Assembly: GCA_044892505.1 (NCBI GenBank)
Contig: CM097883.1
Location: 318,370,001 to 318,434,000, forward strand
Direction of reading: 5' to 3'
DNA length: 64,000 nt
Origin: Schmidtea nova
Lineage: Eukaryota
This document shows, one piece after another, positions 4,288-64,000 of this stretch. The notes under the pieces are model-generated. The model made no database searches. It was not told where the DNA came from and saw nothing but the letters and a program-made list of their open reading frames with translations. Position 1 is the first letter of the stretch, and every line of letters begins with the position of its first letter. The position numbers were made by a program, and so were the translations under genes.

Positions 4288-5913
4288 AAGAAAATAACTT
4301 AATTCATCAAAAGAAGATTTGTAAAAATATTAGTTTTGACATCGTTCAATTTTTGGAATTTTAATGAATATATTAGTATCATTTCGGGTGTATTACAGTA
4401 CCGTTAGCATCTAAGTAATATCATAATAAGTATTTTATTAAAACTAGGAAACTAGTTAATGTCCAAGACTAATAGCGAAAATTCATCCGACTACAACTAG
4501 CTTACCTTTAGAAATCGCATCGAATATCACATTAAACAACTTTATAATAATCATATATAAAATTTCAATCTGTTCGTCCGTCCGTCCCACAAATATTATT
4601 TATTGATTATTATAATTAAAAAATCAAATTATTTTTTAATTTAATTTAATGTTTTAGATATTTATTTAATATATTGCTGAGTTTTAAGGAAAGAATTAAA
4701 TTTATGTCAAATTTTCAACAGTTTTATTATTTTACTTCTGGTTTGTTTATTTATTAATATCACAAATTTAATGCTTACTGTCGATCCGTTGCCATCAATA
4801 TCTAATTTTATATAAATTCAAAAAAATTTGACGGACTTTCTATACAGCTAGTTATCTTTTTAGTATTTAAAATTTTGGCTGAATATTCTTTCAATATATT
4901 CTTTCATTATGGGATATATAGAAAAAGGTCCGTAAAAACTCCAGAGATTTATATTTATTGTATTTATACAATTCCGATTGGCAATTAAACCGATTGCTAC
5001 TATGTAATCAATGAAAGTCGACTGTCATTTTCTCTGTAAAATTTTAAATCTAATGGCTAATTAAAATTTTCTATTTCATATTTGTTTTAGACAATATAAA
5101 TTGATTTTTAACTTTTCAACTTTGCTAGCATTTTCAAATACAATTTAGCTCTTGATTTAACACAGTGAGTCGATTAACAACTTTTGCTGAAAAAGAAGGA
5201 TATTTACATTAGGAAAAGATCATACAAGTTTATATTTCTTTAACATGGAATTTTTTCAATTTTCTTTATCTTAATTTCTAAAACATCTTTAGAATTTGTT
5301 GGTTAAGAAATACTGACTGATTGATTCTGAATTTATTTTCACATAATTTTGTCAAATATTCTAATTTCATTTTATTTTATGCTATAGAATCTAATGTATA
5401 AATTGAATAAATAGACTGTGGCGTAGCGATGGTGAGAAGCAGGAGGCATATGTCTCCAGGTGACAAAACGAAGAAGAGATTTTTTTTCTACCAAAGAATA
5501 ACTTATTTCTTAGTAATAAGTAAAATTCGTTCATTTAAAATTTTCATTCTAATAAAACTGAATTTTCTATTTTATCTGATGTATATGCCTAAATAGAAGG
5601 CATGGGCTCCGGAATCCAAAATATGTAAGTAATTCCCTCAGTTTTTATTAGTTAAAAATAGAAAATGTCCTATTCGCCTTAATACAAAGTTTAACTGAAA
5701 TTTTATAAGAATCTTTGCTTCGTTCTGTTAATATCCATTAAAAATATACATATTCAAACAATTTTAAATTTTCTTCAAATGTAATTAAATTATTTTGGTT
5801 GGTTACTCTTTTTCTAAATTTCATAAATTCGTCATTTTTGACAAATCTTATAATAAATCGTCGATGACGGAAATAGTTTTAATGATTCTAGCATGGAAAT
5901 TTGATCTTTAATA

Positions 5914-6241
5914 CTAAACTAATTTCTCCACTGGCGATATATTTTAAAGTTTTTTAGAATATATAGTATAAATCAATATTTTTTTATTTATTTTACATGA
6001 ATTTTTGGCTCAGATTTTCAAGTGTTTGTAAGTGCCACAAATTAGTGTCAAATTATTAAAAATTATTGACTCTTTTAGTCTAAAAACAAATGCATATAAA
6101 AATATATTAATATGGAAAAGAATGAAATATTTTCCAAATGTATAGCTGTTATTTTTACATTATAAAAACTGTAGTCATGTTATAAGGTGCTTCCAAAAAT
6201 AGCGAATTGCTAGCTTCATTGCGATATTTTATACGCAAACC
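5914..6241 (+). repeat. 328-bp direct duplication (second copy 6680..7007)
   Basis: Near-identical segments from CTAAACTAATTT to ACGCAAACC. Confidence 0.95.
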
Positions 6242-6405: not shown

Positions 6406-7039
6406 CCCTTTCTCTGCGTCAACCGTACGAAGCCGTAAAATATTTTTGTGGTTCGTATGCTAGAACCGGTTTAATACGCAGTTTAAATATATGTTTTATA
6501 TGTTCAATATGTTTTCTTTACCTTTATGTAATGCTTATAAATAAAACGCAAGTTATAAACAAAATATTTGTTTTTTGTTATTAAATAGTAAATTAACTTC
6601 GGATACCGTGTATATACGCATGTACATCATACATAGTGCGACAAACGTACTAATCCGCGCGCCTGAAAAAACGCTAATGCTAAACTAATTTCGCCACTGG
6701 CGATATATTTTAAAGTTTTTTAGAATATATAGTATAAATCAATATTTTTTTATTTATTTTACATGAATTTTTGGCTCAGATTTTCAAGTGTTTGTAAGTG
6801 CCACAAATTAGTGTCAAATTATTAAAAATTATTGATTCTTTTAGTCTAAAAACAAATGCATATAAAAATATATTAATATGGAAAAGAATGAAATATTTTC
6901 CAAATGTATAGCTGTTATTTTTACATTATAAAAACTGTAGTCATGTTATAAGGTGCTTCAAAAAATAGCGAATTGCTAGCTTCATTGCGATATTTCATAC
7001 GCAAACCAGAGCGCTTAAACACACGCCGCAGGGAAAGGG
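6406..7039. mobile_element. piggyBac-like MITE
   Basis: TIRs CCCTTTCTCTGCG / CGCAGGGAAAGGG (1 mismatch); TTAA on the right, ATAA on the left. Confidence 0.7.
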
Positions 7040-8779: not shown

Positions 8780-10013
8780 CGTAGTTCGTTCAATAATGCC
8801 TCGGACTAACGAAGAAAGAAATACAACACAAAAAACTAAACCGACTTTTATTGAACTATATCAAATATTAGTTAGGAAAACATTTAATTATGTTTATATA
8901 ACTACCATTGGCAGCAACCAGCTTATTCCATCAAATAACCAAATCTTGAGATGCATCAGCAAAAATGTCTACGAAGCTATGCAAACCATTGTTCAACAAA
9001 TTGCTGGAGTGCATCTGATGTCTCAAAATGATGTCCACGTAATGCTTTCTTCAGGTGCTTGAACAAAAAGAAGTGGCTCGGAGCAAGGTCCGGGCTGTAA
9101 GGTGGGTTTTGGAGAAGTCTAAAACCACTCTTTTCTGTTGAACATCGTGTAACATTGCTTACATGGACAGGAACATTATCAACAAGGAGCCAATGTGGAA
9201 CATTTCTTGATTTCCGTTTCTTTGCACGGCATTCCTCAACCAATTTGTCATAGTATTGACCATTTATTGTTTGTCCATTAGGCAAGAAATCTAGATGAAT
9301 GACTCCACTTTTGTCCCAAAACACTGAGAGCATCAGTTGTTTTCGATGTGAGTTGTTACTTCTCATCTTCAGAGGAAGTTTCTCTCTACAGATGATTCCC
9401 GTTTGGTTTCAGGTAAGTATAATGAAAGAAGTATCTCGTCCTCAGTAACGATATTATTAATAAATGCATCACCATATTGATTCAACAGTTGCAAATTTAA
9501 CAATGTGCTGTTGAGGCGCATTTCCTTCGAGTCAGGAGACAGATACTTTGGAACAAATCGTGAGCATAATTTGCGATAGCCTAATTTCACAATGATGTGA
9601 CAACTGCCAACACTTATTTTAAGTAATTCTGCAATTTCATCCACATTAATTCGTTTTTCAGCTCGAATAATCCTGGAGCACACTTTCATGGTCATGCTTG
9701 AATAATGATATCCAAAGATATATTGTGGATCTAGGACATTTGTTGTCATATGCAATGGTCATATCACGAAATATTTCATCAGATTACTTCTTTAAAAGCA
9801 CATAGAATTTTTTCACACTTCTGTATTCCACCTCATCCATTTGACAAAAAAATGAAATGTGAGTTAGTTTATGAATTATACGTACGTCAGCCAATCAGAT
9901 TATTTAATTTATGCAAATAAACAAACATACGTGTAGGTGTTAAAACCAATTGGTTTGATTGGTTTATCATGTTTCTTTCTTAGTCAGTCCCAGGCATTAT
10001 TGAACGAACTACG
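8780..10013 (-). mobile_element. Mariner (DD34D) element, TIR to TIR, inactive
   Basis: TIRs CGTAGTTCGTTCAATAATGCC at both ends, TA at left, 1234 bp. Transposase 9755..8977 is frameshifted near 9368, with motifs IVTEDE, SVFWD, LVDNVPVH and PPYSPDLAPS(H). The third catalytic D is replaced by H. Confidence 0.95.
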
Positions 10014-11846: not shown

Positions 11847-12537
11847 TTCTTGCTTGCCCTCTTTCTTTAATTGCCATAGTTTTGCTACTCAGGTGCCAAC
11901 TATTTCTTGCAAGCTGATAAAAACAGCAGGGATCAGTGTATCCATATCTTTGTAAATCTTTTTAAATTGTAAACACAACAACAGATTTTGTTAATTGTAT
12001 TATTCATTAAACATTAGAAAAAGTAATTGTCTTGTGTTCATTTATTTATAAGAACTAGCAACCGACTAAATATAAATCATAATATTGCATATTATTATTT
12101 ATAAAAATAGTTTTAATTATAATTGGAGTCAGCTGTGTTAAGATTATCAAATCCCCACATTTGATCTTAACACTTTTTGTTGGGCCCGCCAAATAGGCTA
12201 AAACAACAAAAATAAAATAAAAGTTTAAAATAATAATAAAATAATAATAAAATAATAAACACAAAAATAGCAATAAAGGAAAAATTAAAAATAGAAATAA
12301 AATAGTAAATAATATTTAATAAATTTCCAGCAAAAGGAAATTTTAAAAATAAAACGGAAACAAGCAGTAAGGGGGGCCTGAAATAAGAATATTAAGAATG
12401 AAATAGATTAATAGTGCAAATAAATAATTAATTACTTGAAAAACCAGGACCACCCAGCGAGAAATTGGAAAAGGAAGTAAAATAATATTTAGATTTAAAT
12501 AAAATAGTAAAAACACTTTGATGGACGGTCTGATCCT

Positions 12538-12580
12538 GATTGGTCAATCTGACCAGCCGGATCAGTATAAATACCGATCC
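12538..12580 (+). promoter_or_regulatory. Inverted CCAAT box plus TATA box within an inverted repeat (family X copy A)
   Basis: GATTGG at 12538; GGATCAG-TATAAATA-CCGATCC; same position and sequence in copy B. Confidence 0.55.
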
Positions 12581-13599
12581 GAAAATCATAACAAAAAACG
12601 GTAAAACTGTTAACTGTTATAAAAACACACTTTTGAATTTTTCAAAGTTTGAAGATACTTTTAATCTACGCAAGATATTGTAAAAACTTGAATCTACCCT
12701 CGGAAAAACTACGAAGTAAATTTTGTTTATTGTATCATTGTTGATTTTGTACCCGGATTTCATTATTAAATTATTTAAATGTTGAATTTTGGTTTTTTTT
12801 TAATAATTTTAACCATGCATATAGACATGCTTCCTTGGCTGCTCACGCGGCGAGGGAGCCCGAGTCGTCGTTGTGGGGCTTCACGGTCTCACATGGCGGT
12901 TCCACCTTTTTCTGTTTTAATATTTTAGATGATTCTGATAATGTCAATTTATAAAGCTGCGTTTGAAATTTTTAGCATTTAAGGTTGCACAATGGATGAG
13001 TCGCTGAATGTGAAGGGAATAATGCAGGGGGCTGCCTGATGGTAAGGGACATCTCCCAGGTACCAGGTACCTTTTCCCAATGTGTGATCGGAATGCATGA
13101 GTTACCGTTTCAAGAAATAGATGAGAATAAAATTTACTAGTAAAAAATCACTCGACAATATACCCAGATATAAACAAATTCAAATAGGGCAAAGTACGTC
13201 TAACTAGTCGAACGAAATAAATGCGAAAACTTATGTGATTTTCTGATAATAGACTATTCACCTGATTTCAGTGTTGAGGTTAGAGATCGATCGTACACAC
13301 CCACTGATCCATGATACAGCGGCCAGATCGCATCAGACAACGTTGGAATGTGATTAAATTCGAGTAAAATAGCATTATCTTGATCGCTGTAAATAGCGCA
13401 AGAATTCCCCAATAATTCGGGAATTTAAATTTCATAGTTACCTGATCGCTGTATATAGCGCAGGGCCAAGTGACGAATATTGTATTCCGACCGTGGTACA
13501 TCGCGGCGAAGATAATTTGAATAATTAAAAATTTAGCATATTTTCTTTTGCATTAAATAAATAATATCTATGATAAGTTAACAAGTTCAAATAGCACAG

Positions 13600-13999
13600 A
13601 TGGTAACAACAAAGATAAATCATATGCTAACCGAACTCAGGAATTCGGTGAAGACGATCAATGAAAAGGAAACGTCTGACATATTCAAGGACCTTCCACC
13701 TCGAATTTTTCGCACCATCAACGCGCAAGTTTACAAATGGCGCCGAGGGTTTAAATCGGAGATGTCCATTCTCCATTTGGGCAGACAAGAGAGATCATAT
13801 ATTCTACCGGGGCGGACCGGATTGGCCAATTTCGAGAAAACCCTATTCAAAGAGATTTGGACAGATGGTCATCTTGATAAATGATGTAGAAGGACGACCG
13901 AATCAGATAATACTGGGGACACATCCCACGAAAGGAATTGCGCAAATTAGGACTGCAAGCGTTCATACCGCGGAAATCTGTCGGAAGAGAATGCAATGA
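13600..13999 (+). pseudogene. Family X ORF2 (copy A), one frameshift, unknown function
   Basis: FKDLPPRIFRTINAQVYKWRR, then in a shifted frame CPFSIWADKRDHIFYRGGPDWPI; aligns to copies B and C. Confidence 0.7.
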
Positions 14000-14242
14000 T
14001 GGACAATCTCCATTTTCATGGGCCAGGCTTCGAAGAATGCCGATTAATCATGAATTACACATCCTATTCCGACGACCTTAACTCTGACGATTTAATCATA
14101 ATAAATAGCTTAATAAAGATCATAGTGTTGATGTTCTGTCTTTGTTGTATTTTGTTCTAACAATAACTAGTTAATTTTAGTAATTCTAATTAATACTTTA
14201 ACGTAAGAGTAGTATACCATTAAATCTGAATAAATTGCAGAA

Positions 14243-14821
14243 ATGAATCTAGAATTAACTCAGAGAGAACTGGAAAAGATGTGGCGAATTCGAAGAGCCC
14301 AGAATAAGGAATTGGGTTACCTCAAGGAAAGTTTGTCCAAAGCGGAAGCACAAATCACCTATTTGCGTAAAAGTTGGTTCGCTCCTGCTCGAATGAAAGA
14401 GCAGATTGGAAAAACAGAGCGAGCGCAACGGACAGCTGATGATTACAGGATGGAGTGGGAAGCCACCAAGATCGAGCTCCGCAAGTGCCTTCATTCTGTA
14501 ACCGCCTCGTACATTGAGCGGGAATTGAAAGATCAAATACGGCCAATCACATACCAAGAATGGACTGCTGAGAAGAAAATGGGAAGCTCAATTGGTACGG
14601 ACGTCGAAGGCCTTACCGAAACCCGTGCCGAACCCAATTCGCCAATCAGCTCTAACACCCCGATCATCAGTACGCATCAAAAGCGTAAGCGAATCGGACA
14701 GAAAAGGCGTCGACAACGAAAACTCTTCGCCCAAAAGATGCAAATTCAGATAGACGCTCAACATAAATTATCCGAGGAAGAATTGTTAAATGAGGTGTTC
14801 AGTGGATTTTCAGTGATTTAG
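14243..14821 (+). CDS. Family X ORF3 (copy A), 192 aa, coiled-coil-like with Arg-rich tail, unknown function
   Basis: Intact ATG-initiated ORF with homologues at 18800..19384 and 63390..62977. Confidence 0.75.
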   Translation: MNLELTQRELEKMWRIRRAQNKELGYLKESLSKAEAQITYLRKSWFAPARMKEQIGKTERAQRTADDYRMEWEATKIELRKCLHSVTASYIERELKDQIRPITYQEWTAEKKMGSSIGTDVEGLTETRAEPNSPISSNTPIISTHQKRKRIGQKRRRQRKLFAQKMQIQIDAQHKLSEEELLNEVFSGFSVI

Positions 14822-15958
14822 TAGGGAAATAAATGAATGGTTACAATGTGTTGTTATTTTTGCTATTTCTTTTACGTGTTGACTTAATTTAAATTTAAAA
14901 GACATAAATAATTATCAGAGACATGTAACCATAAACTTCTCGAGATTTTTACACAAAGTAAAGTAATGAACTAATTGCAATAAATATAAAAGTTCGTACA
15001 GATTCGTTAGTTTACAAATAAAGCGTAAGTCCTTCTAACGGCAGCAATGAACCCGTAAACATAAATGGGGAGTAGTACTATAAATGGTGCTCACCTGTTC
15101 ATCATTGTTTAACCACCCTGCGCATCACCAACTTGATTATCCAGGGAAATGATCAAGGGAAATGATCAAGGGCGCTTGAGTGTATAGTTGCACATTTTAT
15201 GTATGATCATGGATGAGGGATCCCTAGTCATTGTTAGAACATTTTCATCTAACCCCTCCATGAACCCAGCATTTTATTAAAATTAAAAAACTCAGTAACT
15301 TGACATCTGTAAGGTGATGTTGTGTGGTGAGGTGCTCAAATGCAAATGATTGTTTATTAATGGTTTCGTGGGCGAGTGTCTGTGTAGATATCTGAGAGAT
15401 TATCGAGTGCTAATTTCGCTATAGCAATGTGTTGTATCATCAAATAAGAAATAATACTTTAAAAAGAAAGGATCAAATTTAAAACACAAGAAAATAAAGA
15501 AATCGTGCAAAACATCACCAGGAATTAAAAAATAACTTTTGAAGACATGACCTGGGAAGGTTGGTCTAAATGTTAAAAACATGTTTGGAAATTCCGTCTA
15601 TCATAATGTTGGGCCTGCAAAACATCTAAATAGGCAAAAAACATCTATGATTAGTTAAAATAAAAAGTTAAATAATGAATTAAATTTAATCCTATATGCC
15701 AACCGGAACTAAAGATAAATCAAGTAAATCCTCATAAAGAAAATAATAAATTACCAATTATAGGATTATACCAATCATCAGGAAACCGCAGGATTAGAAA
15801 ATCTAGAATGAAAGAAATATTAAATAATAGCAAATTTAATAAATAAAAGTACTTTTTACTAAATAATTTATCGGAAAATTTGACCACTGCAATCTGAAAA
15901 TAAAATAAGGTAAGAATTATTAAAATAATGAGATTTACTTTGAATGGCGGCCGGATCC

Positions 15959-16000
15959 TGATTGGTCGGTTCAGCCAAGACAATCAGTATATATACTGAT
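15959..16000 (+). promoter_or_regulatory. Inverted CCAAT box plus perfect 18-bp palindrome containing TATA (family X copy B)
   Basis: CTGATTGGTC followed by ATCAGTATATATACTGAT at 15983..16000. Confidence 0.55.
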
Positions 16001-18161
16001 CCAAAATCTCATTATTTCAGACTATTATTTTGAGACTAAGACTTAATAAAGTGTCGACTCAACAGAAACTTTATTTAATAAAATCAACTTAATGTGGCGA
16101 ATTACTCTGAAGATTTCTGAAGAAAGCTATCCAGTAATTATTTTAATTTTGTTATGTTAATATGATTTTTGGGTTTAAATTTTCTTATGATATTTTATAT
16201 ATTTATAATTTATTATAGATTTTAAAACGCTACATCTGGAGCTAAATGCTACTAGGGCGCAATCCGCGGCCGTGGAGCTCAGTAGTTCCACGCCACGGTG
16301 AGTGAATTCAAATAGGTTATTTTAATGAATTTAAATTTTCTATGTGAATAGACAAAATTGGTAGAGAATTGCACATAGGGCAGTCAACATAGCGTTAGAG
16401 CAATACCACCTAAATTTTTCAAATAGCCTCATTTCAGGACATAGACGATTCAAGTTAGCGTCACACTGAACGAGAAGTATGGATTCAATACTGAGCACAT
16501 TACACTAGCGATGTATTCCACTACACCATAGAATGTTCAAGGTGTGTTTTAGTGATAGTATTGCATGAGTTCAACACCTTACAGGTACAAAACATAGAAC
16601 AACTAGATAGCGTTTGAGTTATACCCAGACAGACAAAAATGTCGCGATCACATCTGAGACATACAATTTCACAAATTTTTCGATTTCAGCTAATCTGAAA
16701 CATACGAAGCATTTTGATCGTTGACCCATAGCATAGAAAATCCCCGACAGAGTTCGATCAGCACGTGACCAATCGAAACGCGAGATTTGGGGGAAACTAC
16801 ACTCAAGTGATAAGTACAGTTAATAAAGGAAAATGGTAAATTAAATGGGTTAAACGTGACGAGGGAATTGGTTACGATTTTCGTCCATTCGCAAGGGGCC
16901 CGAGAGGTTTATAAGAGGGGATAAATATCCCAGAAAGATGTCTCTAACAAAATATTTTGATTTCAAGCCTTATCCACCCTGATAGTCCTGTTAGAAGATG
17001 GTTAAAAAATTAAAATATTATACAGTGGGAAATGGAAGGTACAGAATAAATATACATGTGGTTCGGATGGCAACGACAATTCAATAATCAATGGAAAATA
17101 TCAACTTCAATGATATTATGATTTTAGTGATTCTATATGACGATATTTTACTGTTGATCTTTTTTGACTTTTGTTTTATGATGATAATTATCTATTGTAC
17201 ATTCATGACAATTATGTGATTAAGCTGTGACTATCTGACAATTTTTATTTTATGGGATAATTTTATTTTGTTGCTGTTAATAAAATATTGTTGACAATTA
17301 ATTTTTGTAATGACAATTTATCATTTGAAAATTTATCATTTATGATCTTGCGAACATATATTGACATTTTTTATGGTGATGGACAAAATTTTATATAATT
17401 TTGATAGAATATTTTGTTTTGAAAATATTTTATGTAAATTAATTTTTTTAACTATTTGTAAAATGGATTATATTTTCATTTATATTTTAATATTTTAATT
17501 CAATAAATTATAATAGTAATAAAATAAATAATACAGATTGTTTAAATAAATTAAAAATAAATAAATTCCTGTCTGTTTAAATAAATTATATTTATGACCT
17601 ACAAAGGTCAGCAAAATGAAATAATATTCCAAGGTTATAAAATAATTTTGAAAACAATTTCAATCAACTCAAGAAGCAAAATAACAATCATTATTGACAG
17701 ATAAAGTGCCTTAAAATTTAGATTATAAACTGACTGATTTTTCAGTCAAATCACCCATAAAATCTTTGCGTAAGAAGAATTTCATAGTTGCTATCGACTA
17801 CTGAAATAATAATTTGGAGCATACAAGATATCGAGCTCAGAAGGCATTCACGCATATATATTTACACATTACAGGAACAACATTGTGAATCTGTAATATT
17901 TTTTAGGTAATTTGTATTTGTTGTATTTGAATAAAATCTTTTAACCAGTATTATCTTATTTATTTATAAATGATACCAAGTTAAGATTCTGGGAACCTCA
18001 ACAGTCAAACGTTACCGCAATATGCATTGGGTGGTAAATCACGGTTATTTACCAGATTATAAAAATTTAAAATGTCATTTCTGACTATAATGATCAATGC
18101 GAAAAATAACTCAGTACGTTTTGTGTTAAACTGAATAAACTGTTTTAGAACGTAATCGATT

Positions 18162-18680
18162 ATGAAAATGTCTAGAAGAGATGTCCTTTACCGAAAATCC
18201 CTGTCAAAGAAGGGAGATCATATGAGCTGAAAGACCAGATATAATAAGTCACGACTGAGCTCTCTCAAGAACCTTCCATTCGAAATACTGCAGTAGGTGC
18301 ATCAGCGGATGTGGCAGTGGAGAAGAGAGTTGGACACCGCCTGCCCGGTCACTGTATGGGACCACCTGCGTCATCACGTGCGGTATCGCGGATGTCCTAG
18401 TTGGCCGATCATTCCCAGCGAGGACTATGAGCTTGGATATGCAGACTGATTTGTTCTGCTCCTGAACGAAGACGGGTTCCCAACCTCGATGATTTATTGG
18501 GGATATATCACAGCGGTGACACTGAAGGAGATCGGGTTCCACTTCTGCACAGAAATCCACATGTTACGAGAGGCTCAAAAAAAATCTCTGGCCGTTTCAA
18601 CGAACTCACCCAGCCCCATCCGGTCAAATTTGCAAATGCCGTCAATTTTCTCATATCGGAATAAACTTTCGGCGGATTGA
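18162..18680 (+). pseudogene. Family X ORF2 (copy B), three in-frame stops
   Basis: LKNLPFEILQ*VHQRMWQWRR...CPVTVWDHLRHHVRYRGCPSWPIIPSEDY in one frame. Confidence 0.7.
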
Positions 18681-18799
18681 AATCAATTTTGTTAATAAAT
18701 TTATTAGCCCGTTGAGCTTTTTCTGCAATTTTAGTCTTCATTACTATTTTATATGATTAACAGAATTTACAAGTCACGATAACCGTTGAGTTTTTTTAT

Positions 18800-19384
18800 A
18801 TGGAACTGAAATGTCAAACATAATAAGGAGTTCAGATAAGTTATGCCAGCAAAACCAAGACCATCAAGTGTGGGAATTACAGCGGCAAATAAAACGGCTT
18901 ACCACCGCCAACGAGGAATTGAAACAGAAATGGTTCACCCCGGAGCAGATGAAAACACAGATGATGAAAATTTCGTGATTATAAGGGGCGTTAACGGAGA
19001 CCAAAACAGAACTAGGCGCGGTACAGTGAAAACTCCAAAACTGTCTAAATACCGTGACCAAATCGTTTATTGACACAGAGCTCAGAGCCCTCATGATGGA
19101 CAACAATGGTAATGAAAGATATTTCCGTCGGAACGAATTGAGAGGGTCTTCAGCCTACACCTCCGGCTTCCATCCAGCTCGAGTCAAGATCTTATGCTAA
19201 TCCAATTATGTTTCAACCACTGCCAAACTCAGGAATGAAACCATTGATCGGTTCAAGAAAAAGACGATTGGGTGCTAAGCAAAGGCGGCGCAAACGCGAA
19301 TTCGCCCGACAACTAGCTGTGCAAGTGGATTACCTGAGCGAACTACCAGAATTAGATCTTTTAGATGACATCGTGTTAATTTAA
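18800..19384 (+). pseudogene. Family X ORF3 (copy B), stops and frameshifts
   Basis: LKQKWFTPEQMKTQMMK...ELGAVQ*KLQNCLNTVTKSFIDTELR and RKRRLGAKQRRRKREFARQLAVQVD, colinear with copy A ORF3. Confidence 0.75.
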
Positions 19385-20812
19385 AAAAATTAAATAAATT
19401 AGTAATAATTTTTCGTGTTGAGTTGTTTCTCGGGTCATCAGCAGTTTTCTTTTAATAATTAAAGACGGGAGTGGTTGGAGTAGTAGCTGTCACCCTAAAC
19501 TAGAAAGCCATTTAGAGTATAGGACAACCGCAAAATGAGCTAAATGAGAATTGATAGGACCGAACATGAAGATTGACAGCGTAAGACCTTCCATCGGCAG
19601 CAGGAATCTGTTGAAGAAAATAAATGAAGAGTTGTTTCGGTAATGAAGCTCACCTGTCCATCATTTTTCCGACTCCGTATACAGTTCCAACCTAGCTACT
19701 TAAGGAATAGTTAGGGGTATACGGGTGCGGTAGATGTTTTTTTTGTATGGTTGTGGGTGAGGTATCCCTAGTGCACATAACTAAATTCCAAATTCCATCC
19801 ACAAACCCATCAATAATATTAACTACAAATTATTCTTCGTAATAATTCTATTAAGTATAGAAAGAGAAAGGAAGTCCTAAAAATCTAGGAAAAGCAAAAA
19901 AATTATTCAAAAAGAGCTTTTCAAATTGCTCATTAAATTTTTTTGAAAAAAAAGCAAAACATATTTCGTTCTTGATAATGAATCTTATTTTACATTAACC
20001 AGTCCACAAAATTGTGGCTTCTAAGTTCATAGAGATTTATTAAAAAATTAGTAAAAATTAGTCCAGATGAAATTCAACTTAATTTTGTTCGAAAGAGTAT
20101 CAAAGAAAGTAAATTCATTGTACAGATATTCAAGGGTAATGAAGAAAAACAACTCATTATAACAGAATTCCCCATGTGTAACTAGTCCAGTGATAAACTT
20201 TGATAATGCTGTTTTACCCATCAGATTATAACAAGAATCCAATATTATTGTTTTTCATCAATTTGTAGTACGGTTGAAATTATATTTAATCAGATATTGT
20301 TTACATTGTGATATTGTTGATAAACTAATATATTGTTTTATTTGAATAGTTTGAACAAGTGGAGTCAGAGATAAAGCGAAAATCCATAACTACTATTGCA
20401 TCGACTTGTTATTTAAATCCAGCATTATTATTATTACTAGTGTGTTATCTGTCAAAAATGACGGAATTTTTCGAAATAAATATATCTTTAAAACACTTTT
20501 TGTTTGAGCTTTCTATCTTAAAAAATGAGAAAAAAAACTGTCATGTAAAAAAAATTCATCAAAATTGGGAATGAGATAAAACGTACTATACATCGTTGAA
20601 AAGCTTTTGAAAAGATTTTTAAAACACTTTTTGTTTGAGCTTTCTATCTTAAGAAATGAAAAAGTTGAGTTAGCGAAAACAGCGTTACACACACACAAAC
20701 AAACATACATGGGAAATTATATATGTAGATTATTATTCAATGGTGCAAACAACACAAGTTTTCAACACTGGAAAAAGTATTAATAAGATCGTTAACACGC
20801 GAAAAATTATTA

Positions 20813-20859: not shown

Positions 20860-21772
20860 TCATTGACAAATATTGCAAGTCTTCTTACATAAATCAGCGA
20901 TATGGCTTACTGAGCAATAGTTTTGCCGCCAAGATTCACACAGTTCATCACCTTCAGTGTTCTTGCACTCACCAGCAGTCTTGATTGTGGTGGCTTCTAA
21001 ATTGTTAGAAACACAAAACGTATAAGATAAATTGTATCACCTTTAGAGGATTTGTTACAAAATCCACAGCTTTCTGGACAATTAGTTTTCATATGATCTT
21101 CATAATTTCTGCAGTACCCTTGATCAACCCAGGAAATACAAACTTCAGCTGTTTGTTTATTTCTGCAATGAGTATTGACTGCAGATGAAGAGGCTAGACG
21201 AAAACTAAAATAACATTTATCTAAAAGCAAATATACTTGTTGTATCACTGCCAATACAAAATCCACATGCCTTTGCACAGTTCTCCTTCATATATTCTTT
21301 GTTTTCCGAACAATAACCAGTAGATGTCCATGAATTGCAGGTTTCATCATCTTCGACGTTGAGGCATATAATTGGAGTCGTTGTTGTTGCTAGAAATTAT
21401 CGGGCAATAAATAATTTCTTAATTTACTTAATACTTTTCGGCAATACACACAAATTACAACTTTTTCGGCATAAAACTGCTCTATTGAGATAAGATTGAC
21501 ATAGTCCTCTTTCTTTCAAATTTTCACAACTTTCTTCACTGTCTTCGTTAACACATTCCGCAATTGTCGTTGACTCCATACTTGGTAAGATTACTGTTGT
21601 AACTTTTGGTTCATTACATAAATTACAAGAATTTGAGCATCGTTGACCTCTGTCAGTATTGCATTGATTTCGACGCACTATTTCCGTGCAGATGTGTAGA
21701 GAATCGCGATCTTTACATTCATTTATTAACTTGCTGTCTTCTATTTGACAAATTTGACAAGTTCTTTGGCAT
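20860..21772 (-). CDS. Astacin-ShKT exons 11-14 (end of ShKT 6 through ShKT 11, and stop)
   Basis: Exons 21772-21435, 21389-21237, 21193-21041 and 20996-20860 separated by 45, 43 and 44 bp GT-AG introns; six-cysteine ShKT patterns. Confidence 0.92.
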
Positions 21773-24700
21773 CTTAAGTATGTTATCAGTTATGATTCTA
21801 TACTACAATATATAATTAAGTATTTCAAATCATTTGTTCTCAACCTTTTTATTAGAAACTGACAAACGACATTAAATAATTTGGTCGATCAGAAAGGAAA
21901 CGTTGATGAAAAAGAGTATTTTATATAATTTTAATAAATATAATTTTTGAAGATTTGTATGATATTTCATAACTTTTATAATTTTTATAACAAATCATAA
22001 TCGAAAATTTTCACTCAATAAAACTTTGCAGCAATGACTTATATTGTTATTTAACTCATATTTGAAGGATATATAAATTTAAAATATTACATAACACAAG
22101 TAGCCAATTAGAATCCAAAATAATTAATCAAATTTGAAAATATAGAGAAATAAGTAAAGTTGAAAAAGACCTAGAAGGTGGATCAAAGTGCCAAAAACTT
22201 GTTTGGAAATTTTTTCTATCAAAATATTATGTATATGAAATTCTTCGTAATAATTCTGTCATGTTGTCAGATCGTGTGACCGTTGTAAGGTCACACGCCC
22301 ATTCGATATCAACATGGTTCACTTGAGGTTCAGGGTGTGTGGCGTAGACTAGCATGCGATGTTACACATTACAATAATGATTGTTATTTCACATTGATAG
22401 ACTGTGGTCCCAGCCGCTACTCACTGTGGAGGAAAATAAGATCGGAAAATGCAAGAGATATTTGTGTAAACATAATGCAGATATTCAGAGAAAGAGGAGC
22501 ACCGGAGGAGCTTCTACTCGACAACAGCCCGGCGTTTCGATCAAACGAGCTTGCTGATTTGAGCAAAAGTTGGAATGTGCAAATTCATTTTAGATGCGCG
22601 TATAGACCACAAGGCAATGGATTACCTAGAGGAACCATCGCACCATCAAGCGAAATCCAGCAAGGTGTCGGGCAGATCCTTTAACAATGGTGCAATGGTA
22701 TAATCTGGCACCAACTGACGGAACTGATGAGGAATCGTGCCCCACATGAGATTGTTCAAATATCCGCGGAGACAAGAAGTCGGCGTCAAAACAGGAGGCA
22801 TACAGCGAGGGGACAGAGTTTACGTTAAACCCTCGAATGTCAGATGCACTACTGAATGGCCAATCGGTGTGGTTACTAATCTGGTGGAGGATCAGCAAGT
22901 CGAGGTTAACGGCGTTCTACGACATATAACAGATGTTCGTAGAGTGGAGACACCTGAGTGCGAACCCGTGGAAAGGCAACGATCCACTCGCGTACGGCGT
23001 CGTCCTGGATATCTGGATGATTATGATTATGTAGATGACTACACCAGCGACGATCAAGAGTCTGTTTCGAAAACTACCAGGGCTGATGATCTCGAAATCA
23101 GGGCGGAATGTGGTTTTAAAGAAAAGAGATTGTTTTAATAAGTGGAAAAAAGGTAAAAGGCAGAATTTAAAAATAACACTGTGGTAGAAATAAAACTTGT
23201 GTTTATCAAATTATTCAACACATCTGTTTTCATTTTTAAAGGAAAAAACCTCCGCCAGAGCATTTTGTGCTTTAGCAGGATTTCGCCTCCTGTCATTGTG
23301 CAAAATTCGCCTATATATGATTCCAATTGAAAGATTTTTGGCACACTTGAAGGCTTATGTTGATGAATGGACGGCCCAGTTTAAATATCAGTTGTCACCA
23401 AATATAAAAGTAGGCTAAAGCCTTCGATCACTTATACTTTTCCAACCGTTTTGAACACTTAAAAGATAGAATCTTCCGTGCACATTAAAAACTTGATATA
23501 AAAGGAATTTAATTTCTAATAAATTCGTTGATCATGTCTACAAATTTGATTTGTCTGTGATGGGGTGGTGAATAATTATTTGGTTTTTGAATTCATGTCC
23601 AGTTTACTTTACGGACACAGATTACTCCATGAGAAGATGAAACTTGAACATCATTGTGATATTGAACTTTAAAAATTATGGAATTGTCAAAAAATGTTAA
23701 GATAAAAAAAAACAAAAAATAAAAGTTTCAAAATGTTTCGAATAATATTCACAAAACAATTTTTGATTTATAGTCTTACAAAAATTAATGTGAAAATTAT
23801 TGAATTAAAGTTTAGAATAAAATTTAATAATTTGAAACTTTGAAGAAAAATACCGGTGAAATTGCACTTCAAGGACGGGTCCCGTTTTAGTAAGGCATGT
23901 CCACTAAAGAAGCTCACAAAATTTCAAAAATGCACAAATTTTTTATTTTACCACATATCGTGATAAAATTAAAATAAAATCATGATAAAAAAGTAAAAAG
24001 CAGTTAACATTCTGGACATTAATGATTAGGTAATTGAGTTAACACGTTTTTAGAACACTAAATGATCTTTTGTTTGAAGTGGAGAAATAAAACATGAAAA
24101 TATAATGATAGGAACTTTTTTTCCTTTTTCTTCATGCGTCTTTCTAGCTGAGCTTCATTTTCGGTAGTTCACCCATTCTCATACACTTTTGCTTTGAGAT
24201 GAGCCCAATAGGGCGAATCTGAGGTGCACATGAAGGGTTCATGGATTTTCAAAAACATATTATATTTTTGATTCAAATACAATCCAAATTGACATTGACA
24301 TAATCACAGGAGGCAAGGTCTGGCCGAAGATGTAATGTTCCCTGAGGTAATGGTCATCAAAAAATGGTAGGAGGTGCTACTGCAGATGTAAATGGACCAC
24401 CAATGAGGACAATCCGCACCTTGATACGGCAGCCCACACCAATACTTTATAGCAAAGTTTTCCACGCTATTTAAGAGATATCTCACATGGAACATTGTGC
24501 CTTTGATCTGAGTAAACGTAGTATCCTTCCTTTTGTGAACCAGTGAGTTTGAAGTATGCTCCATCATTCAATACAAACTCTTTCTTTATTTTCTCAATGT
24601 AGAAATATTTTTAAAAATTCAATTTTCTCAGACTGACGAATTTGTTGAGCAGTGTTTATTATAAGGGCTTCCACTCTCTTTCTAAACTACAAAATGTCAC

Positions 24701-27700
24701 GTGAATGTGAAATGTAAATTGCCTACTTATAGCAGACTCAATTTGGAAATGGTGTGTAACACTGCTTCCTACATAGGTGTGTTTAATCTTTCACAATGAA
24801 GATTATTAAATGTTCTACTTTTTTTTCTGAAGCAAAAATTCATCAAATGATTCCATACTTTCTATAATACTTTATCAGTCCTTGTAAATTGTTATTTCGC
24901 TAATGGTAATGCTAAATGATGCTCCTTTCAACCCACAAATAAATTTTAATGAAATAAAAAGCTTTCATTAGACTCACTAAGTATTAAAGAGAAAAATCGT
25001 TGTCAATAATGTAGTATTTCGTCACAGTTATTTGCTAAGAACTTTATAACAAATAATCCAAAAACTTATATTATTAAAATCTTTAATCGTCTTCATCTTT
25101 GAACTTTTTCGATTTCATAAATTTTTATATTGTTCAGACAAAAGATTAAAAATATTTTTATCCCTTGTCTGAAAAAATGAAACTAACAGAAACTTATAAT
25201 CTCAACGTGACGTAACTAAGTAAACGCTACAGAACGTACCTATTAGCAAAGCCGGCATGAGCAGTGCATAGACCTCGTTGATTAACTGCATCGCATACAT
25301 CATCCGAGTCTTCGTTTTTGCACAGTTTATGGGAACAGAAATTGCAGGATTTTGCACAATGGTATTTCATGGTTTCTTTGTATTTCTAAAAAATTAAATT
25401 ATATCTAAATCAATAATTTCCATACAATCATTAATATGAAAATTATTGATTTGAATAAAGAGATCAAAGGTGAAACCAAAAGAAAATTATGATAAATAAT
25501 ATCTAATAAATGTAACTATGGTTACGAATTAAATTTAGAAAAATGAAACTTGCACATGCATGCTATCTCGAGTTACGTGGTACTTGAGTTATAAAACATT
25601 TTGCACTAATTTTGAGTCTTAAAATATAAGGCTTTGACTTACAAATAACCATTTAATCTTGTAACTTAAAGGTTGCCTGCATACAAATACATGTTTTATA
25701 TTAATCGGTTACAAAAAAATGCTACAAAAGCTGAATCATCAAATTTCACATAATATTACAAAAAAAATAAACCATAAGAATATTATGTAAATGTCATGCA
25801 TTTGTGTTAAGTCGTTGCATACAAATGAAATAAGCCTCTCCACCAAATATCAAACTATTACAACAGCATTTACTACTTGCTCAAATAAGAACTAATTCGC
25901 ACTGTTTCAACTGTCAAATAACACAGAAATAAGTATTATTTTATAATTGAACATTTTCACATAATAACATATTGCAGCCGGGCCCGGCGCCACGGGGGGC
26001 ATTTGGGGGAAATGCCCCCTGAAAAGGGAAATGCCCCCAAAACCGAGATGTCTTAAAAAATTTAGGTGTCTATTTTTCTGTTAATGAGCTGTTAAATGAG
26101 CTGGCTTCGCGTGGAGATGTTGAAGCGTTGGGACATCTAAATAGTGGGAAATTTCTTCAAATGTGTGAATACACGCTTGATATTGATCCAAAATTGAGCG
26201 AGATTTCTCAAACGATACCTGCTAATGCTAAGTATACTTCACATGAAATGCAGGATTTGTTAGTAAAGGTTAAGGAACATTCTTTAACTCCTCAACTTCT
26301 ACAAAATCTGTCACGAAAGATTCTTGAAAGACTTAACTGCAGCCTTATTATGAGCACATTGAGTAATGCAGATTGCGAAGACGAAAATAATTCCATGCAA
26401 AATGGCAATCGTCAAGTGTTTTTCGAGATTTTGGATGAAGTAATTAATGAATTACAGTCACGTTTTTCCAAATCAAACTGCGATTTGATTGCGGCGCTAG
26501 ATGCACTTTTACCTGGTAACAAAAACATTTTCCTTCAGGAAATAAAGATTGAACCATTGCTAAGTCTTGTAGCTGCAAGTGATAAGAAATTTACTGACAA
26601 ATCCCTGACAGCTGAGATTGTCGTCGCGAAAGAGCTAATTAACAAATCATCTATTGCCAATTCAAAAAAAATAGATGTTCTTGCTTCATTCCTGTCAAAT
26701 TACAGAGATGCATTCCCACACTTTTATCACCTTATCTGTTGCTCTCTTCTGTTGTCGGCTTCCACAATAACATGTGAAGCAACATTCTCAATATTGACGC
26801 GTTTAATGTCTCCCTACTGAAAGTGCAAGGCTGTGCAAAGAAAACTAGACCTGGCGTTATTAGCTTATGAGAAGGAAGAATCGAAGCTCGTCAGTTGTGA
26901 ATACGCTCTACCATTGTTTCAGGAGAGTAGTCGGCGTCTGATTTTGTAAAGCCTGCTTTTATACTGCTGTTGAACACATGCTGCATGTGTTTTTTATATT
27001 CTTGTATTGTCAAAGTAGAATATACCAATATTGGCTTTTATCTGTCAATATTTGATATATGGATGAGCAAAGGGTTCTAAATATGATGATAAATATAAGA
27101 TGATACTCGCAGACAATAAGACAAATGTCGATAGGACCGTTTTTTTTGTAATTTAAAATTTAAGGGGTTGCCCCACCAGTATCAATAATTGACCCCCCCC
27201 CATTGAATCATTCCTGGCGCCGGGCCCGATTGCAGCAAAGACTTATTTTGTTATTTATTAATTATTTAACATTTAATTAATGCTGCTACCAAGAAAGCAC
27301 CAAAATATTACAAAAGTATTAAACGAAAACGAAAAGCATATACAATGTCACTGTATTCAGTGTTTCAATCCATGAAAGTGTGTGTGTCACTATGATTATA
27401 GAACTGAAATGTTAGTATGCATGAAATCAGAAAAGTCACAGAAAGAATTTTTAGTTCCTTCATAAATGGCTCATTTAATGGTGGATAATAGAGAAGCCTG
27501 TAGACTTTCTGCTCAATGTTTGGCTATAACTGCTTAAAACATTCAGATAGAGAAATAATGGGTCTGAGATTATAATCAAACAAAGAGTTCGGCATGCCTT
27601 CAATGATCAGTTCAAGTATATGGTGTCGGTTGAGAAAATGCAAGAAGATTATTCTTACCTGTTTCTGCAACAATTAGCATGTCTCTTATTTTTTATTTTA

Positions 27701-36700: not shown

Positions 36701-38518
36701 GAAATACGAGTCGTCAACAAAGTTATCTTTTTATCAAGAAGATCGGATGGGTAGAGGAAGCCCGAGTGAGCAACCACAAATCCAATTACCCCAAACTAAT
36801 TTGAAATCCCGCAGGAAAAAAAAGAAGGGAAACCCAGTGGTAAAAAAAATTCGATTAACCAATGATTTAATTATTTTTAAGGAAAACCCCAGAAGCAATC
36901 TGATTTACTCCGAAGATAAAATAGAAAATTGGGATTACCAACAGAAATTTAATTAGTGCATAATTAGCCCAAGTGACAGGAGTCACTATATAAACTCAGA
37001 CAAATGGGTCAAATTTCCAGTTTGTAGAAGCACGAAATTATAATTCAAAATTACATAAATATTTTTTAAAGCGAAAAAGGGACGAGGTTTTAAAGTTTAC
37101 AGATGGTTAAAATTTGTGTCAAATCAATTGTTTGCGTACCAGAAAGGTGGGTCTCCTATTGGAAGACCTATCACTAACGCTTGAAGAGTGCAAATAATTG
37201 TGTAACTGTAATTCTGTGGTGAAATTTGAAAATAAAGATTATTGTGTTGGGTTTTGTTAATTTGTTTACAAAGAAAACAGACGAGAAGTCAGACAGTAAC
37301 CGACTATTTTATAATAATCACAATTTTATTTTTGGGTGATATATTTCCAATCCAAAAGCATGAAACTTTTTAACCTGACATTGCCCATCATTTGCAAAGT
37401 ATTGGCAATTGGATACCAAATCTTTACATTCTGTCCGAGTATCTATTTCATGAGCTTTAGCAACTTCTTGTTCAGTTTTGTTCGGCTCATTCCTATCATA
37501 GTCGTTTCCACATTTTCCACAAGATCCCAAGCAAATCTTTAAAGTAGTCCCATTGCATTTATTCTTTATAAATTCAAGTAAATTGTTTAAACTTAAACTT
37601 CAACCGTCTACTTCTCTGAACATTGCATCGCAATAAGAATCTGGTGAATAATTTCTACAAGGAGCATTTGGCTTTTTAATTGTCATGTTTGTCGAACACG
37701 TCCCGCATGAAAGAGCACAGTTAGCTTTCATGAATCCAGGATTGACAGTGCATTGTCCTTTTTCAGCCCAGTCTTCGCATAAATGAGAATTGTGTCTATC
37801 TTTGCATAAAAATTCAATTATGCTTGGGTCTGAATGATTTCCACAGGTATTGCAACTTTTTTTACAGTAAACTTTTGTCCATGTATCAAAATAGCAGAAA
37901 CCGTCGTTTTTGTTTCTTTGACATTGAGCTTTGTCAAGGTCAACACATTCTAAATAAAAACACATAAAAATAAATATAAATTATTGTTATATTAAAAATA
38001 AGGAAAAGAAATTTGAACTTCACAATGAAATTAGTATAAAAGATCTTTGCTTTCGGTTGAAAACTGAAATATTTTCTCTATTCTGTTTACTCATTTACAA
38101 AATTTTTGCTTTGAGTAAAAATGTATATTATAGAGTGAATTCCACATAAATATCTTTCATGAGAAAAGTGAAAATGTGTTGCAAATAACAGCATAAAGAC
38201 GAATTCAATAATTTTGAATTGATGCGGAGTCATATATAGTGTAACTGCAAAATACAAACTAGATAATTAATTAATTACAATTTTATTGACGACATTAATC
38301 AATTCTTTTGGAAAACAAAATCACCTAGTTTGATAAGCACGATAGCTGTCTGTCAAATAATGGGTGCGGAATAAAAGGTTTTATTTATCCATTTACTGAT
38401 ATCATCGAAAATGGGTAAAGATTGTGGATCTTGCTCGAAGAATTAAAACTGTTAATGGGAACACTGGGTATAAAAGCAAAGTTTTATTCCATAAAAATTT
38501 ACATCCATGATCATCATC

Positions 38519-63822: not shown

Positions 63823-64000
63823 TTAAAACAAATTGGTCCATCTGTCAGAATTCCTCCTGCTTCGGGATTCCACGAAGTATTTAGTGCAATCGTGGGGGTA
63901 ATCTTGCTCGAGGTCAATCGGCCACTCCTGGCTTCCATGCCAGATGATCTTGTCAGTACTACTTCGAAAGAGGCTTAATGCTAGAGATCTTACTGCTGGT
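63823..64000 (-). pseudogene. Family X ORF2 fragment (copy C)
   Basis: DKIIWHGSQEWPIDLEQDYPHDCTKYFV aligns with HHVRYRGCPSWPIIPSEDYELGYAD*FV of copy B. Confidence 0.55.

What the first reader, a model, noticed from the sequence alone, without database searches (positions are those of the whole stretch)
12178..19775. Family X: a 3-4 kb TG...CA element with a conserved small-gene cassette and no mobility enzyme
Seen: three diverged copies in 64 kb (12178..15230, 15607..19775, 62403..>64000). A and B share one layout: TGTTGGGCC, about 380 bp AT-rich, CCAAT plus TATA, a GC-rich block about 640 bp in, decayed ORF1 (SQCVIGMHEL versus SRCVLVIVLHEF, weak), ORF2, ORF3, two conserved motifs, CTAGT..CA. 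C shows the part from ORF2 to the end. Copy B has a perfect CATAA TSD. No internal direct repeats, RT, integrase or transposase motifs. Known: TG...CA with a 4-6 bp TSD is the retroviral-type integrase signature, and giant LTR elements (Burro) are described in Schmidtea. Inference: either giant solo LTRs that encode their own proteins, reminiscent of MMTV sag, or a non-autonomous virus-like unit moved in trans by an integrase. I recognise neither protein.
Basis: partly seen in the sequence, partly recalled or inferred. Interest (0 to 1): 0.85.

Follow-up and report, generated by a model that had tools for sequence, protein, structure and literature searches.

The report
Giant solo LTRs carrying two genes
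Three old, strongly diverged copies of a 3-4 kb inserted unit in an AT-rich animal genome (probably a planarian) are most likely leftover long terminal repeats of giant retrovirus-like elements, unusual because each repeat holds its own promoter and two small protein genes that resemble nothing known.

Summary
The repeat family is real, but its 3' limits and the quoted target-site duplication (TSD) are wrong. Copies A and B are homologous from their first to their last bases (nhmmer E 3e-9 and 1e-24). They share, in the same order, a terminus, a promoter block, ORF2, ORF3, a 3' block and an end block. Copy C shows the part from ORF2 to the 3' block.

A paralogous empty site at 22174-22257 shows that B is an insertion of 15607-19812 with a 4-bp TSD (ATAA). 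A is 12178-15271 with TSD TTTT. The ends read TGTTGGG...CCCAGCA in A and TGTTGGG...CCCATCA in B.

No open frame on either strand has a Pfam domain, and there are no internal direct repeats. ORF2 and ORF3 have no detectable relatives in sequence searches, and the ORF3 model has none by fold. Third codon positions are at random identity while first and second are conserved, so the proteins were under constraint. "ORF1" is not supported.

Best reading (about 0.6): these are solo LTRs of giant Ty3/gypsy-type (Burro-like) elements. Each LTR would be a self-contained Pol II unit encoding two proteins.

I could not test whether any copy flanks gag-pol, because no genome of this organism was reachable.

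The parts
12178..15271 (+). Copy A, whole unit (3,094 bp). It begins TGTTGGG and ends CCCAGCA.
   Evidence: Homology to B runs from base 2 to base 3091. The ends were read and aligned.
12174..12177 (.). Left copy of A's 4-bp target-site duplication (TTTT). The right copy is at 15272-15275.
   Evidence: Read directly. It lies in a T run, so the exact phase is ambiguous by one base.
12515..12587 (+). Promoter block of A: inverted CCAAT box (ATTGG, 12539-12543) and TATA box (12566-12573).
   Evidence: It is 77% identical to B 15937-16008. The 40-nt pattern is found only in A and B, with 0 matches expected. Promoter function is inferred from the motifs.
12829..12902 (+). GC-rich block of A, which folds into two stable hairpins.
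   Evidence: MFE -39.8 kcal/mol, z -2.9. It sits at the same relative position as the hairpin at B 16260-16300 (z -3.0).
13600..13999 (+). ORF2 of A. It is broken: its homology to B's single frame is split over two frames, which counts as one frameshift.
   Evidence: E 4e-4 and 1.8e-10 to the same frame of B. No Pfam hit, no relatives, no PDB match. The AF2 model is poor, pLDDT 39.
14243..14821 (+). ORF3 of A, intact at 192 codons. The model shows long N-terminal helices, a disordered linker, an Arg/Lys-rich helix and an acidic, Leu-rich tail.
   Evidence: AF2 pLDDT 76 with helices 7-43, 48-98, 144-175 and 178-191. No homologue was found.
15022..15109 (+). 3' conserved block of A. It holds a 7-bp hairpin (15074-15080 with 15085-15091) followed by GCTCACCTGT. 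This is the candidate 3'-end processing region (R/U5 border).
   Evidence: It is 72% identical to B 19578-19668. All three copies are aligned. In the hairpin 20 of 21 cells pair, and three pairs change on both sides.
15196..15271 (+). Conserved end block of A (U5/att-like).
15607..19812 (+). Copy B, whole unit (4,206 bp). It begins TGTTGGG and ends CCCATCA. The TSD ATAA is at 15603-15606 and 19813-19816.
   Evidence: The empty-site paralogue fixes the junctions. Sequence was read.
15937..16008 (+). Promoter block of B: ATTGG at 15961-15965 and TATA box at 15988-15995.
17090..17980 (+). AT-rich stretch of about 0.9 kb in B with no counterpart in A. It accounts for most of the length difference and may be a nested insertion or an expansion.
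   Evidence: Sequence. There is no A/B alignment here. It has short matches to other AT-rich places in the window.
18231..18680 (+). ORF2 of B, broken by three in-frame stops with no frameshift.
18811..19384 (+). ORF3 of B, broken by four in-frame stops and one frameshift.
19578..19668 (+). 3' conserved block of B, with the hairpin at 19633-19639 pairing with 19644-19650.
22174..22257 (+). Paralogous empty site for copy B. It is not part of the element but is the key evidence for it. The left flank of B matches 22174-22224 and the right flank matches 22221-22257. The 4-nt overlap (22221-22224, AAAA) corresponds to the TSD.
   Evidence: Left flank: 78% over 51 nt, score 23.5 against a shuffle maximum of 15. 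Right flank: 28 of 37 ungapped, including an exact 18-mer.
62334..64000 (-). Copy C, cut by the window end. The 3' limit is uncertain (62334-62403) and the 5' part lies beyond 64000.
   Evidence: ORF3 matches A at E 8e-11. The 3' block matches B at E 5e-4. Alignment.
62918..63390 (-). ORF3 of C, broken by one frameshift that separates the basic C-terminal part.
63826..64000 (-). Visible part of ORF2 of C. It carries the WPI motif shared with A and B and runs off the window.
   Evidence: columns G51, W55, P56 and I57 are invariant.
62554..62746 (-). 3' conserved block of C, with the hairpin at 62647-62641 pairing with 62636-62630 (minus strand).

Best explanation
A, B and probably C are solo long terminal repeats. 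They would be what is left after the two LTRs of one element recombined. The parent elements would be giant Ty3/gypsy-type, retrovirus-like elements of this AT-rich metazoan genome; the planarian 'Burro' group is the obvious candidate. The three copies belong to three deeply diverged lineages.

Shown:
- Each complete copy is an insertion bounded by TG...CA ends with a 7-nt imperfect inverted repeat and a 4-bp target duplication.
- For B, a paralogous empty site is present.
- The copies hold no enzyme domain and no internal repeats.
- The two ends, a CCAAT/TATA block about 360-390 bp in, ORF2, ORF3 and a 3' block are conserved, while everything else has diverged beyond recognition.
- Both proteins evolved under amino-acid constraint.

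Inferred:
- The first 420 bp or so are U3.
- Transcription starts about 30 nt after the TATA box.
- A 2.5-3.6 kb R region carries a GC-rich hairpin, ORF2 (about 150 codons) and ORF3 (about 190 codons).
- The 3' block (a covarying 7-bp hairpin plus a 10-nt motif that differs at one base among the three copies) marks 3'-end formation, leaving a U5 of about 160 nt.
- Every LTR, solo or not, would then be a self-contained Pol II unit making a short mRNA for two small proteins. Read-through of the 5' LTR would give the genomic RNA.
- ORF3 (coiled-coil helices, an Arg/Lys-rich patch, an acidic Leu-rich tail) is most plausibly a nuclear nucleic-acid-binding regulator of the element's own RNA or promoter. 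Its role would be comparable to accessory regulators of complex retroviruses, with no homology to any of them.
- The function of ORF2 (beta-rich, WPI motif) is open.
For: Element limits and insertion:
- Homology is coextensive with the ends (alignments).
- The TSD TTTT of A was read.

LTR-like anatomy:
- The only inverted repeat at the ends is 7 nt, and there are no direct repeats.
- The promoter block lies inside the unit. Its upstream 360 bp could be inherited through RNA only by the LTR mechanism (established knowledge of retroviral reverse transcription).
- TSDs of 4 bp and TG...CA ends are the signature of retroviral-type integrases (established knowledge).
- The 15 nt upstream of A and B are not purine-rich, and no TGG follows either end. 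Both copies therefore stand alone, as solo LTRs do.

Size: literature gives Burro an internal part of at most 25 kb and a total above 30 kb, so its LTRs are several kb long (PMC6431247).

Coding constraint: identity at codon positions 1/2/3 is 0.42-0.48 / 0.52-0.78 / 0.26-0.32, with position 3 at the random level.

No enzyme.

cis-elements: hairpin covariation and GC-rich hairpins with z about -3.

ORF3 architecture.
Against: - No copy in the window flanks a gag-pol region. Both complete copies are solitary, and the far side of C lies outside the window.
- No genome of this organism or of its relatives was reachable. The pairing of X units around an internal region, which is the defining test of an LTR, is therefore untested.
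- No Burro LTR sequence was compared.
- An R region of 2.5-3.6 kb containing genes is not known to me for any LTR element.
- The start and end of the transcript are read from motifs only.
- The poly(A) hexamer is not conserved in position among the three copies.
- A and B lie 335 bp apart in the same orientation. That needs either high copy density or a target preference.
- The proteins have no relatives at all, so nothing ties them to retroelements.
Confidence: 0.6

Rival explanations
1. A stand-alone, non-autonomous DNA element. It would be cut and pasted, or otherwise inserted as DNA, by an integrase or DDE transposase supplied in trans (Ginger-like or of an unknown kind). It would carry its own two-gene cassette as a 'satellite' of integrase-bearing elements.
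For: - All testable copies stand alone, with 4-bp TSDs and TG...CA ends starting TGTTG.
- rve integrase remnants lie in the same window, at 22289-22681 and 46422-47133.
- A DNA route has no difficulty with a promoter inside the unit.
Against: - The terminal inverted repeat is only 7 nt and imperfect, and no longer inverted repeat exists. From established descriptions, Ginger-type elements have inverted repeats of tens to hundreds of bp.
- No transposase-bearing partner with the same ends is seen.
- The pattern of conserved blocks (ends, promoter, 3'-processing region) is the pattern of an LTR.
Confidence: 0.15
2. A truncated or rearranged non-autonomous LTR element (TRIM/LARD-like) whose short LTRs have been lost or are too decayed to see. 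The 3-4 kb would then be the 'internal' region rather than an LTR.
For: The unit has coding capacity without enzymes, as large retrotransposon derivatives do (PMC6431247).
Against: - No terminal direct repeats are present in A or B.
- A/B homology starts and ends exactly at the TG and CA ends that abut the TSDs, so the present ends are the integration ends.
- No PBS-like or purine-tract-like stretch lies inside the ends.
Confidence: 0.05
3. An immobile host gene family: a tandemly duplicated two-gene cassette with a conserved promoter.
For: - A and B are adjacent and in the same orientation.
- ORF3 of A is intact.
- The proteins were under constraint.
Against: - The empty-site paralogue with a 4-bp duplication shows B was inserted as a discrete unit.
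- Homology stops sharply at TG...CA ends.
- C lies 42 kb away on the other strand.
- Most reading frames are broken.
Confidence: 0.03

Closest known systems
LTRs of the giant Ty3/gypsy-type 'Burro' elements of Schmidtea mediterranea (Grohme et al. 2018, as summarised in PMC6431247)
   Same: - LTRs are several kb long, inferred from a total above 30 kb against an internal part of at most 25 kb.
- Copy number is in the thousands, in an AT-rich planarian genome.
- The elements are reported to carry accessory ORFs.
- The ends are of the integrase type.
   Different: - No sequence comparison was possible.
- The source organism of the window is not verified.
- The literature I could read does not mention genes inside the LTRs.
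- A, B and C are far more diverged from each other than copies of one family would be.
Accessory genes that lie in or overlap the LTR of complex retroviruses, for example the MMTV superantigen gene in U3 (from established knowledge)
   Same: A protein-coding frame lies within the repeat, so every LTR carries a copy.
   Different: - There is no sequence or fold similarity. No named hit came back from Pfam, PDB, BFVD or the protein collections.
- Here there are two ORFs.
- They lie downstream of the LTR's own promoter, in the presumed R rather than U3.
- The LTR is two to three times longer.
Ogre-type plant LTR retrotransposons with 1.9-6.5 kb LTRs (PMC6431247)
   Same: Very long LTRs.
   Different: - According to that review, the extra ORFs of Ogre lie in the internal region, not in the LTR.
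- The host is a plant.
Ginger-type DNA transposons (integrase-related DDE, 4-bp TSD; from established knowledge)
   Same: A 4-bp TSD and ends beginning TGT.
   Different: - The long terminal inverted repeats that define them are absent.
- No DDE gene is present.

Membership tests
LTR of an LTR retrotransposon (solo LTR) | 5'-TG...CA-3' ends with a short inverted repeat | tested here: met
   A reads TGTTGGG...CCCAGCA and B reads TGTTGGG...CCCATCA, matching at 6 of 7 positions as inverted repeats.
LTR of an LTR retrotransposon (solo LTR) | Target-site duplication of 4-6 bp directly abutting the ends | tested here: met
   B has ATAA on both sides, confirmed by the empty site at 22221-22224. A has TTTT on both sides.
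LTR of an LTR retrotransposon (solo LTR) | Other copies occur as direct pairs around an internal region with a primer-binding site, gag-pol and a purine tract | not testable with these tools
   No genome of the organism was reachable. The ORF look-ups and pattern scans found nothing. Within the window, A and B are solitary.
LTR of an LTR retrotransposon (solo LTR) | Promoter and 3'-end signals in one orientation inside the unit (U3-R-U5) | tested here: inconclusive
   A conserved inverted CCAAT plus TATA block is present, as is a conserved 3' block. Both are read from motifs only, with no transcript data.
Burro (giant planarian Ty3/gypsy) | Sequence similarity of the LTR or its flanking internal part to Burro elements | not tested
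Only the size argument from PMC6431247 applies.
TRIM/LARD non-autonomous LTR elements | Terminal direct repeats flanking a non-coding or enzyme-less interior | tested here: not met
   No direct repeat of at least 20 nt occurs at the ends of A or B.
Ginger-like or other cut-and-paste DNA transposons | Terminal inverted repeats of tens of bp or more | tested here: not met
   Only 7 nt are found, and no inverted pair occurs at the ends.
MMTV-sag-like or Rev/Rex/Tas-like retroviral accessory proteins | Detectable sequence or fold similarity of ORF2 or ORF3 to those proteins | tested here: not met
   - Pfam: none.
- PDB by sequence: none.
- PDB and BFVD by fold, for ORF3: none with E at or below 0.001.
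- ORF2 could not be compared by fold because its model is poor.

The most novel reading that the evidence does not exclude
Long terminal repeats that are genes in their own right. In several anciently diverged lineages of giant retrovirus-like elements, the LTR would hold a conserved promoter-to-poly(A) unit. That unit would encode two lineage-restricted proteins inside a multi-kilobase R region. Thousands of solo LTRs could then go on expressing trans-acting element proteins long after the rest of the element is gone.
Probability: 0.35. Interest if true: 0.7.

Novelty: new variant of a known kind. Interest (0 to 1): 0.5.

Why it matters
If the reading holds, solo LTRs are not inert scars. They would be a dispersed reservoir of small regulatory genes and promoters. 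That bears on how giant retroelements reached thousands of copies in planarian genomes. It also bears on why PIWI-dependent silencing of LTR elements is tissue-specific there (PMC8532177).

It would also extend the known organisation of LTRs to one with a multi-kilobase, protein-coding R region.

In practical terms, the corrected ends, the TSD length and the empty site give annotation rules for this family.

Tried and rejected
Relatives of ORF3:
- The word-indexed search of 5.8 billion proteins found none.
- The profile search against 1.84 billion representatives gave three hits. All are bacterial repeat proteins (MucBP and HAMP arrays) matched in 5-6 stretches, so they are spurious.
- Pfam, PDB sequences, and PDB and BFVD folds gave nothing.

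Relatives of ORF2:
- The single-sequence and profile searches, Pfam and PDB all gave nothing.
- The AF2 model was too poor (pLDDT 39) to use for a fold search.
- A by-eye likeness of the WPI motif to the C-terminal part of the neighbouring integrase remnant is not real (BLASTP E 0.69).

Other copies elsewhere:
- Exact-product look-ups for ORF3-A, ORF3-C and ORF2-A were not on record.
- The promoter-block pattern had 0 matches in metagenome and viral contigs.

RNA and repeats:
- There was no Rfam family and no tRNA.
- There were no further copies in the window by nhmmer, tblastn or the terminal pattern.
- No empty site was found for A.
- 'ORF1' was rejected.
- The bacterial promoter scan is irrelevant to a eukaryote.
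- The Grohme 2018 paper is not held.

Two slips to report:
- To query the broken frames apart, I worked out the bounds of their open pieces. Those bounds stand in the references. They are not repeated here.


Full report
CONTEXT

The window is AT-rich (17-40% G+C in 2-kb bins) and has four N runs, which I left untouched.

Open frames show metazoan host exons:
- an astacin exon at 43845-44069(-);
- ShK domains at 37603-37980(-), 21427-21789(-) and 21000-21287(-);
- a TRAP-alpha exon at 55730-56074(+).

They also show many decayed mobile elements:
- mariner at 8980-9408(-), with an HTH at 33569-33976(-);
- pogo/Tc5 at 34344-34955(+) and 40330-40674(+);
- rve integrase at 22289-22681(+) and 46422-47133(+);
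- RVT_1 at 31923-32255(-).

A planarian source is plausible but was not verified. Copies A and B lie just beyond the 3' end of the minus-strand astacin/ShK gene.

Yes, in substance.

- At the DNA level, A and B share only two short blastn blocks.
- At the protein level, ORF3 of A finds B (E 5e-13) and C (E 8e-11), and ORF2 of A finds B (E 6e-8).
- tblastx gives one collinear chain: promoter block, ORF2, ORF3, 3' block, end block.
- nhmmer aligns A 2-706 to B 15608-16282 (E 3e-9) and A 1489-3091 to B 18245-19809 (E 1e-24).
- A 40-nt pattern across the inverted CCAAT box and the TATA box matches only A and B; none was expected by chance.
- No direct or long inverted repeats lie inside or at the ends.
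- None of 86 open frames of at least 40 codons, on both strands of A, B and C, has a Pfam domain at E 0.01 or better.
- 'ORF1' has no statistical support.

CORRECTED LIMITS

- A and B stay alignable for about 40 nt more and end CCCAGCA (A, 15271) and CCCATCA (B, 19812).
- The decisive evidence is a paralogue of B's insertion site elsewhere in the window. B's left flank (15556-15606) matches 22174-22224 at 78% over 51 nt, score 23.5 against a shuffle maximum of 15.
- B's right flank (19813-19849) matches 22221-22257 at 28 of 37 positions without gaps, including an exact 18-mer.
- The two matches overlap by exactly four bases (AAAA in the paralogue). This corresponds to ATAA on both sides of B.
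- B is therefore an insertion of 4,206 bp with a 4-bp duplication. The 'perfect CATAA' lies inside it.
- With the same end, A (3,094 bp) is flanked by TTTT on both sides.
- The 3' limit of C cannot be fixed (62334-62403).

THE GENES

ORF3 is intact only in A (192 codons). Break counts, given without places, are:
- A: ORF2 has one frameshift and ORF3 has none.
- B: ORF2 has three in-frame stops. ORF3 has four in-frame stops and one frameshift.
- C: ORF3 has one frameshift, and ORF2 runs off the window.

Within the aligned blocks, identity is 0.42-0.48 at first codon positions, 0.52-0.78 at second and 0.26-0.32 at third. The third-position value is what base composition alone gives. Synonymous sites are therefore saturated, and dN/dS cannot be given as a number. 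The proteins were clearly under constraint while the lineages diverged. One caveat applies: the blocks were chosen by protein similarity.

The ORF3 model is helical (pLDDT 76). It has two long N-terminal helices, a disordered linker, a helix rich in Arg/Lys and an acidic, Leu-rich terminal helix. Short shared motifs include:
- WFAPARMK in A, WFTPEQMK in B and DFSPAEMT in C;
- IRPIT in both A and C.

ORF2 shares invariant G, W, P and I columns around a WPI motif, but its model is unusable.

Neither protein has a detectable relative:
- 5.8 billion clustered proteins by word search;
- 1.84 billion representatives by full HMMER for ORF3, which gave only spurious repeat-protein hits;
- Pfam;
- PDB by sequence;
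- PDB and viral models by fold, for ORF3.

CIS-ELEMENTS

- The promoter block sits 337-405 nt (A) and 330-398 nt (B) from the 5' end.
- A GC-rich block about 650-720 nt in folds into stable hairpins in both copies (z about -3).
- The 3' block is not globally structured (z -0.7 to -1.3).
- It does contain a 7-bp hairpin in which 20 of 21 cells pair and three pairs change on both sides among the three copies. Every slid control falls to about 33-52% paired; 21 of 500 shuffles do as well as the observed structure. With three sequences this is suggestive only.
- The hairpin is followed by ten bases that read GCTCACCTGT in A and B and GCTCATCTGT in C.
- About 160 nt remain to the end, and the last 75 nt or so are again conserved.

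WHAT IT IS

The ends, the 4-bp duplication and the empty site show integrase-type insertion of a discrete unit.

The unit's own conserved promoter lies several hundred bases inside its 5' end. Such a unit cannot reproduce its first 400 bp through an RNA copy unless it is an LTR, where U3 is restored from the 3' copy. A DNA route would avoid that problem, but the 7-nt inverted repeat is far shorter than in integrase-related DNA transposons.

The conserved blocks fall where an LTR keeps its signals: both attachment ends, the promoter, the 3'-processing region and U5. No purine run precedes A or B, and no TGG follows either. They are therefore solitary, as solo LTRs with retained duplications are.

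Planarian Burro elements are reported with at most 25 kb of internal sequence in a total above 30 kb. Their LTRs are thus several kb long, and they occur in thousands of copies (PMC6431247).

I therefore read A, B and probably C as solo LTRs of three anciently separated lineages of such giant elements (confidence about 0.6).

The mechanism is inferred, not shown. Each LTR would be a complete Pol II unit whose short transcript encodes ORF2 and ORF3, while read-through gives the genomic RNA. ORF3 would be a nuclear nucleic-acid-binding regulator.

WHAT I COULD NOT DO

The defining test is whether X units pair around gag-pol. It needs the genome, which none of the collections held.

I did not use the window's integrase remnants to pull in public contigs with full-length Gypsy/Burro-type elements.

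VERDICT

This is a real family with corrected boundaries. It is most likely made of giant solo LTRs that carry a conserved two-gene transcription unit. That makes it a new variant of a known kind, and it may already be catalogued as an LTR entry in a repeat library I could not consult. Interest is moderate (0.5).

Noticed in passing
window 22174-22257: An 84-bp stretch is paralogous to the two flanks of copy B, making it an 'empty site'. It lies directly upstream of an rve integrase remnant. The repeat it belongs to extends weakly leftwards (15412-15606 against 22022-22224).
   Followed up: yes
window 22289-23135 (+) and 46422-47133 (+): Two decayed retroviral-type integrase remnants (rve, Integrase_H2C2, rve_3). 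Neither is followed by anything resembling family X.
   Followed up: partly
window 26023-26817 (+): The longest open frame in the window (265 codons) has no Pfam hit at E 0.001. By eye, its C-terminus recalls the dimerisation end of hAT-type transposases. That is a lead from memory and was not tested.
   Followed up: no
window 29971-30181 and 30957-31167, beside the N run at 31168-31376: A 211-bp direct repeat at 100% identity abuts an assembly gap, and related 92% copies lie at 31400-31528. It may be an assembly artefact or a tandem array. An RVT_1 remnant lies next to it at 31923-32255(-).
   Followed up: no
window 43845-44069 (-), 37603-37980 (-), 21427-21789 (-), 21000-21287 (-): Exons of what looks like one minus-strand astacin metalloprotease gene with several ShK domains, spread over more than 20 kb and interrupted by transposon remnants. 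A TRAP-alpha exon lies at 55730-56074(+).
   Followed up: partly
window 5909-6241 and 6675-7007: A 333-bp direct repeat at 98.5% identity, 766 bp apart. It has no TG...CA ends, so it looks like a local tandem duplication.
   Followed up: partly
window 28665-28955 and 47762-47476: A 291-bp inverted repeat pair at 95% identity, 19 kb apart. These are probably two copies of a small element.
   Followed up: no
window 17090-17980 (inside copy B): An AT-rich segment of about 0.9 kb is absent from copy A and has short matches to other AT-rich places (30802-30875, 21918-21961). It may be a nested small element.
   Followed up: no
window 16290-16300 (B) and 14230-14243 (A): B has a GGTGAGT string right after its GC-rich hairpin. 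A has TTGCAG just before the ORF3 start codon. These would fit a splice donor and acceptor, but they are not conserved between the copies and were not tested.
   Followed up: no
window 8980-9758 (-), 33569-33976 (-), 34344-34955 (+), 40330-40674 (+): mariner and pogo/Tc5 transposase remnants.
   Followed up: no
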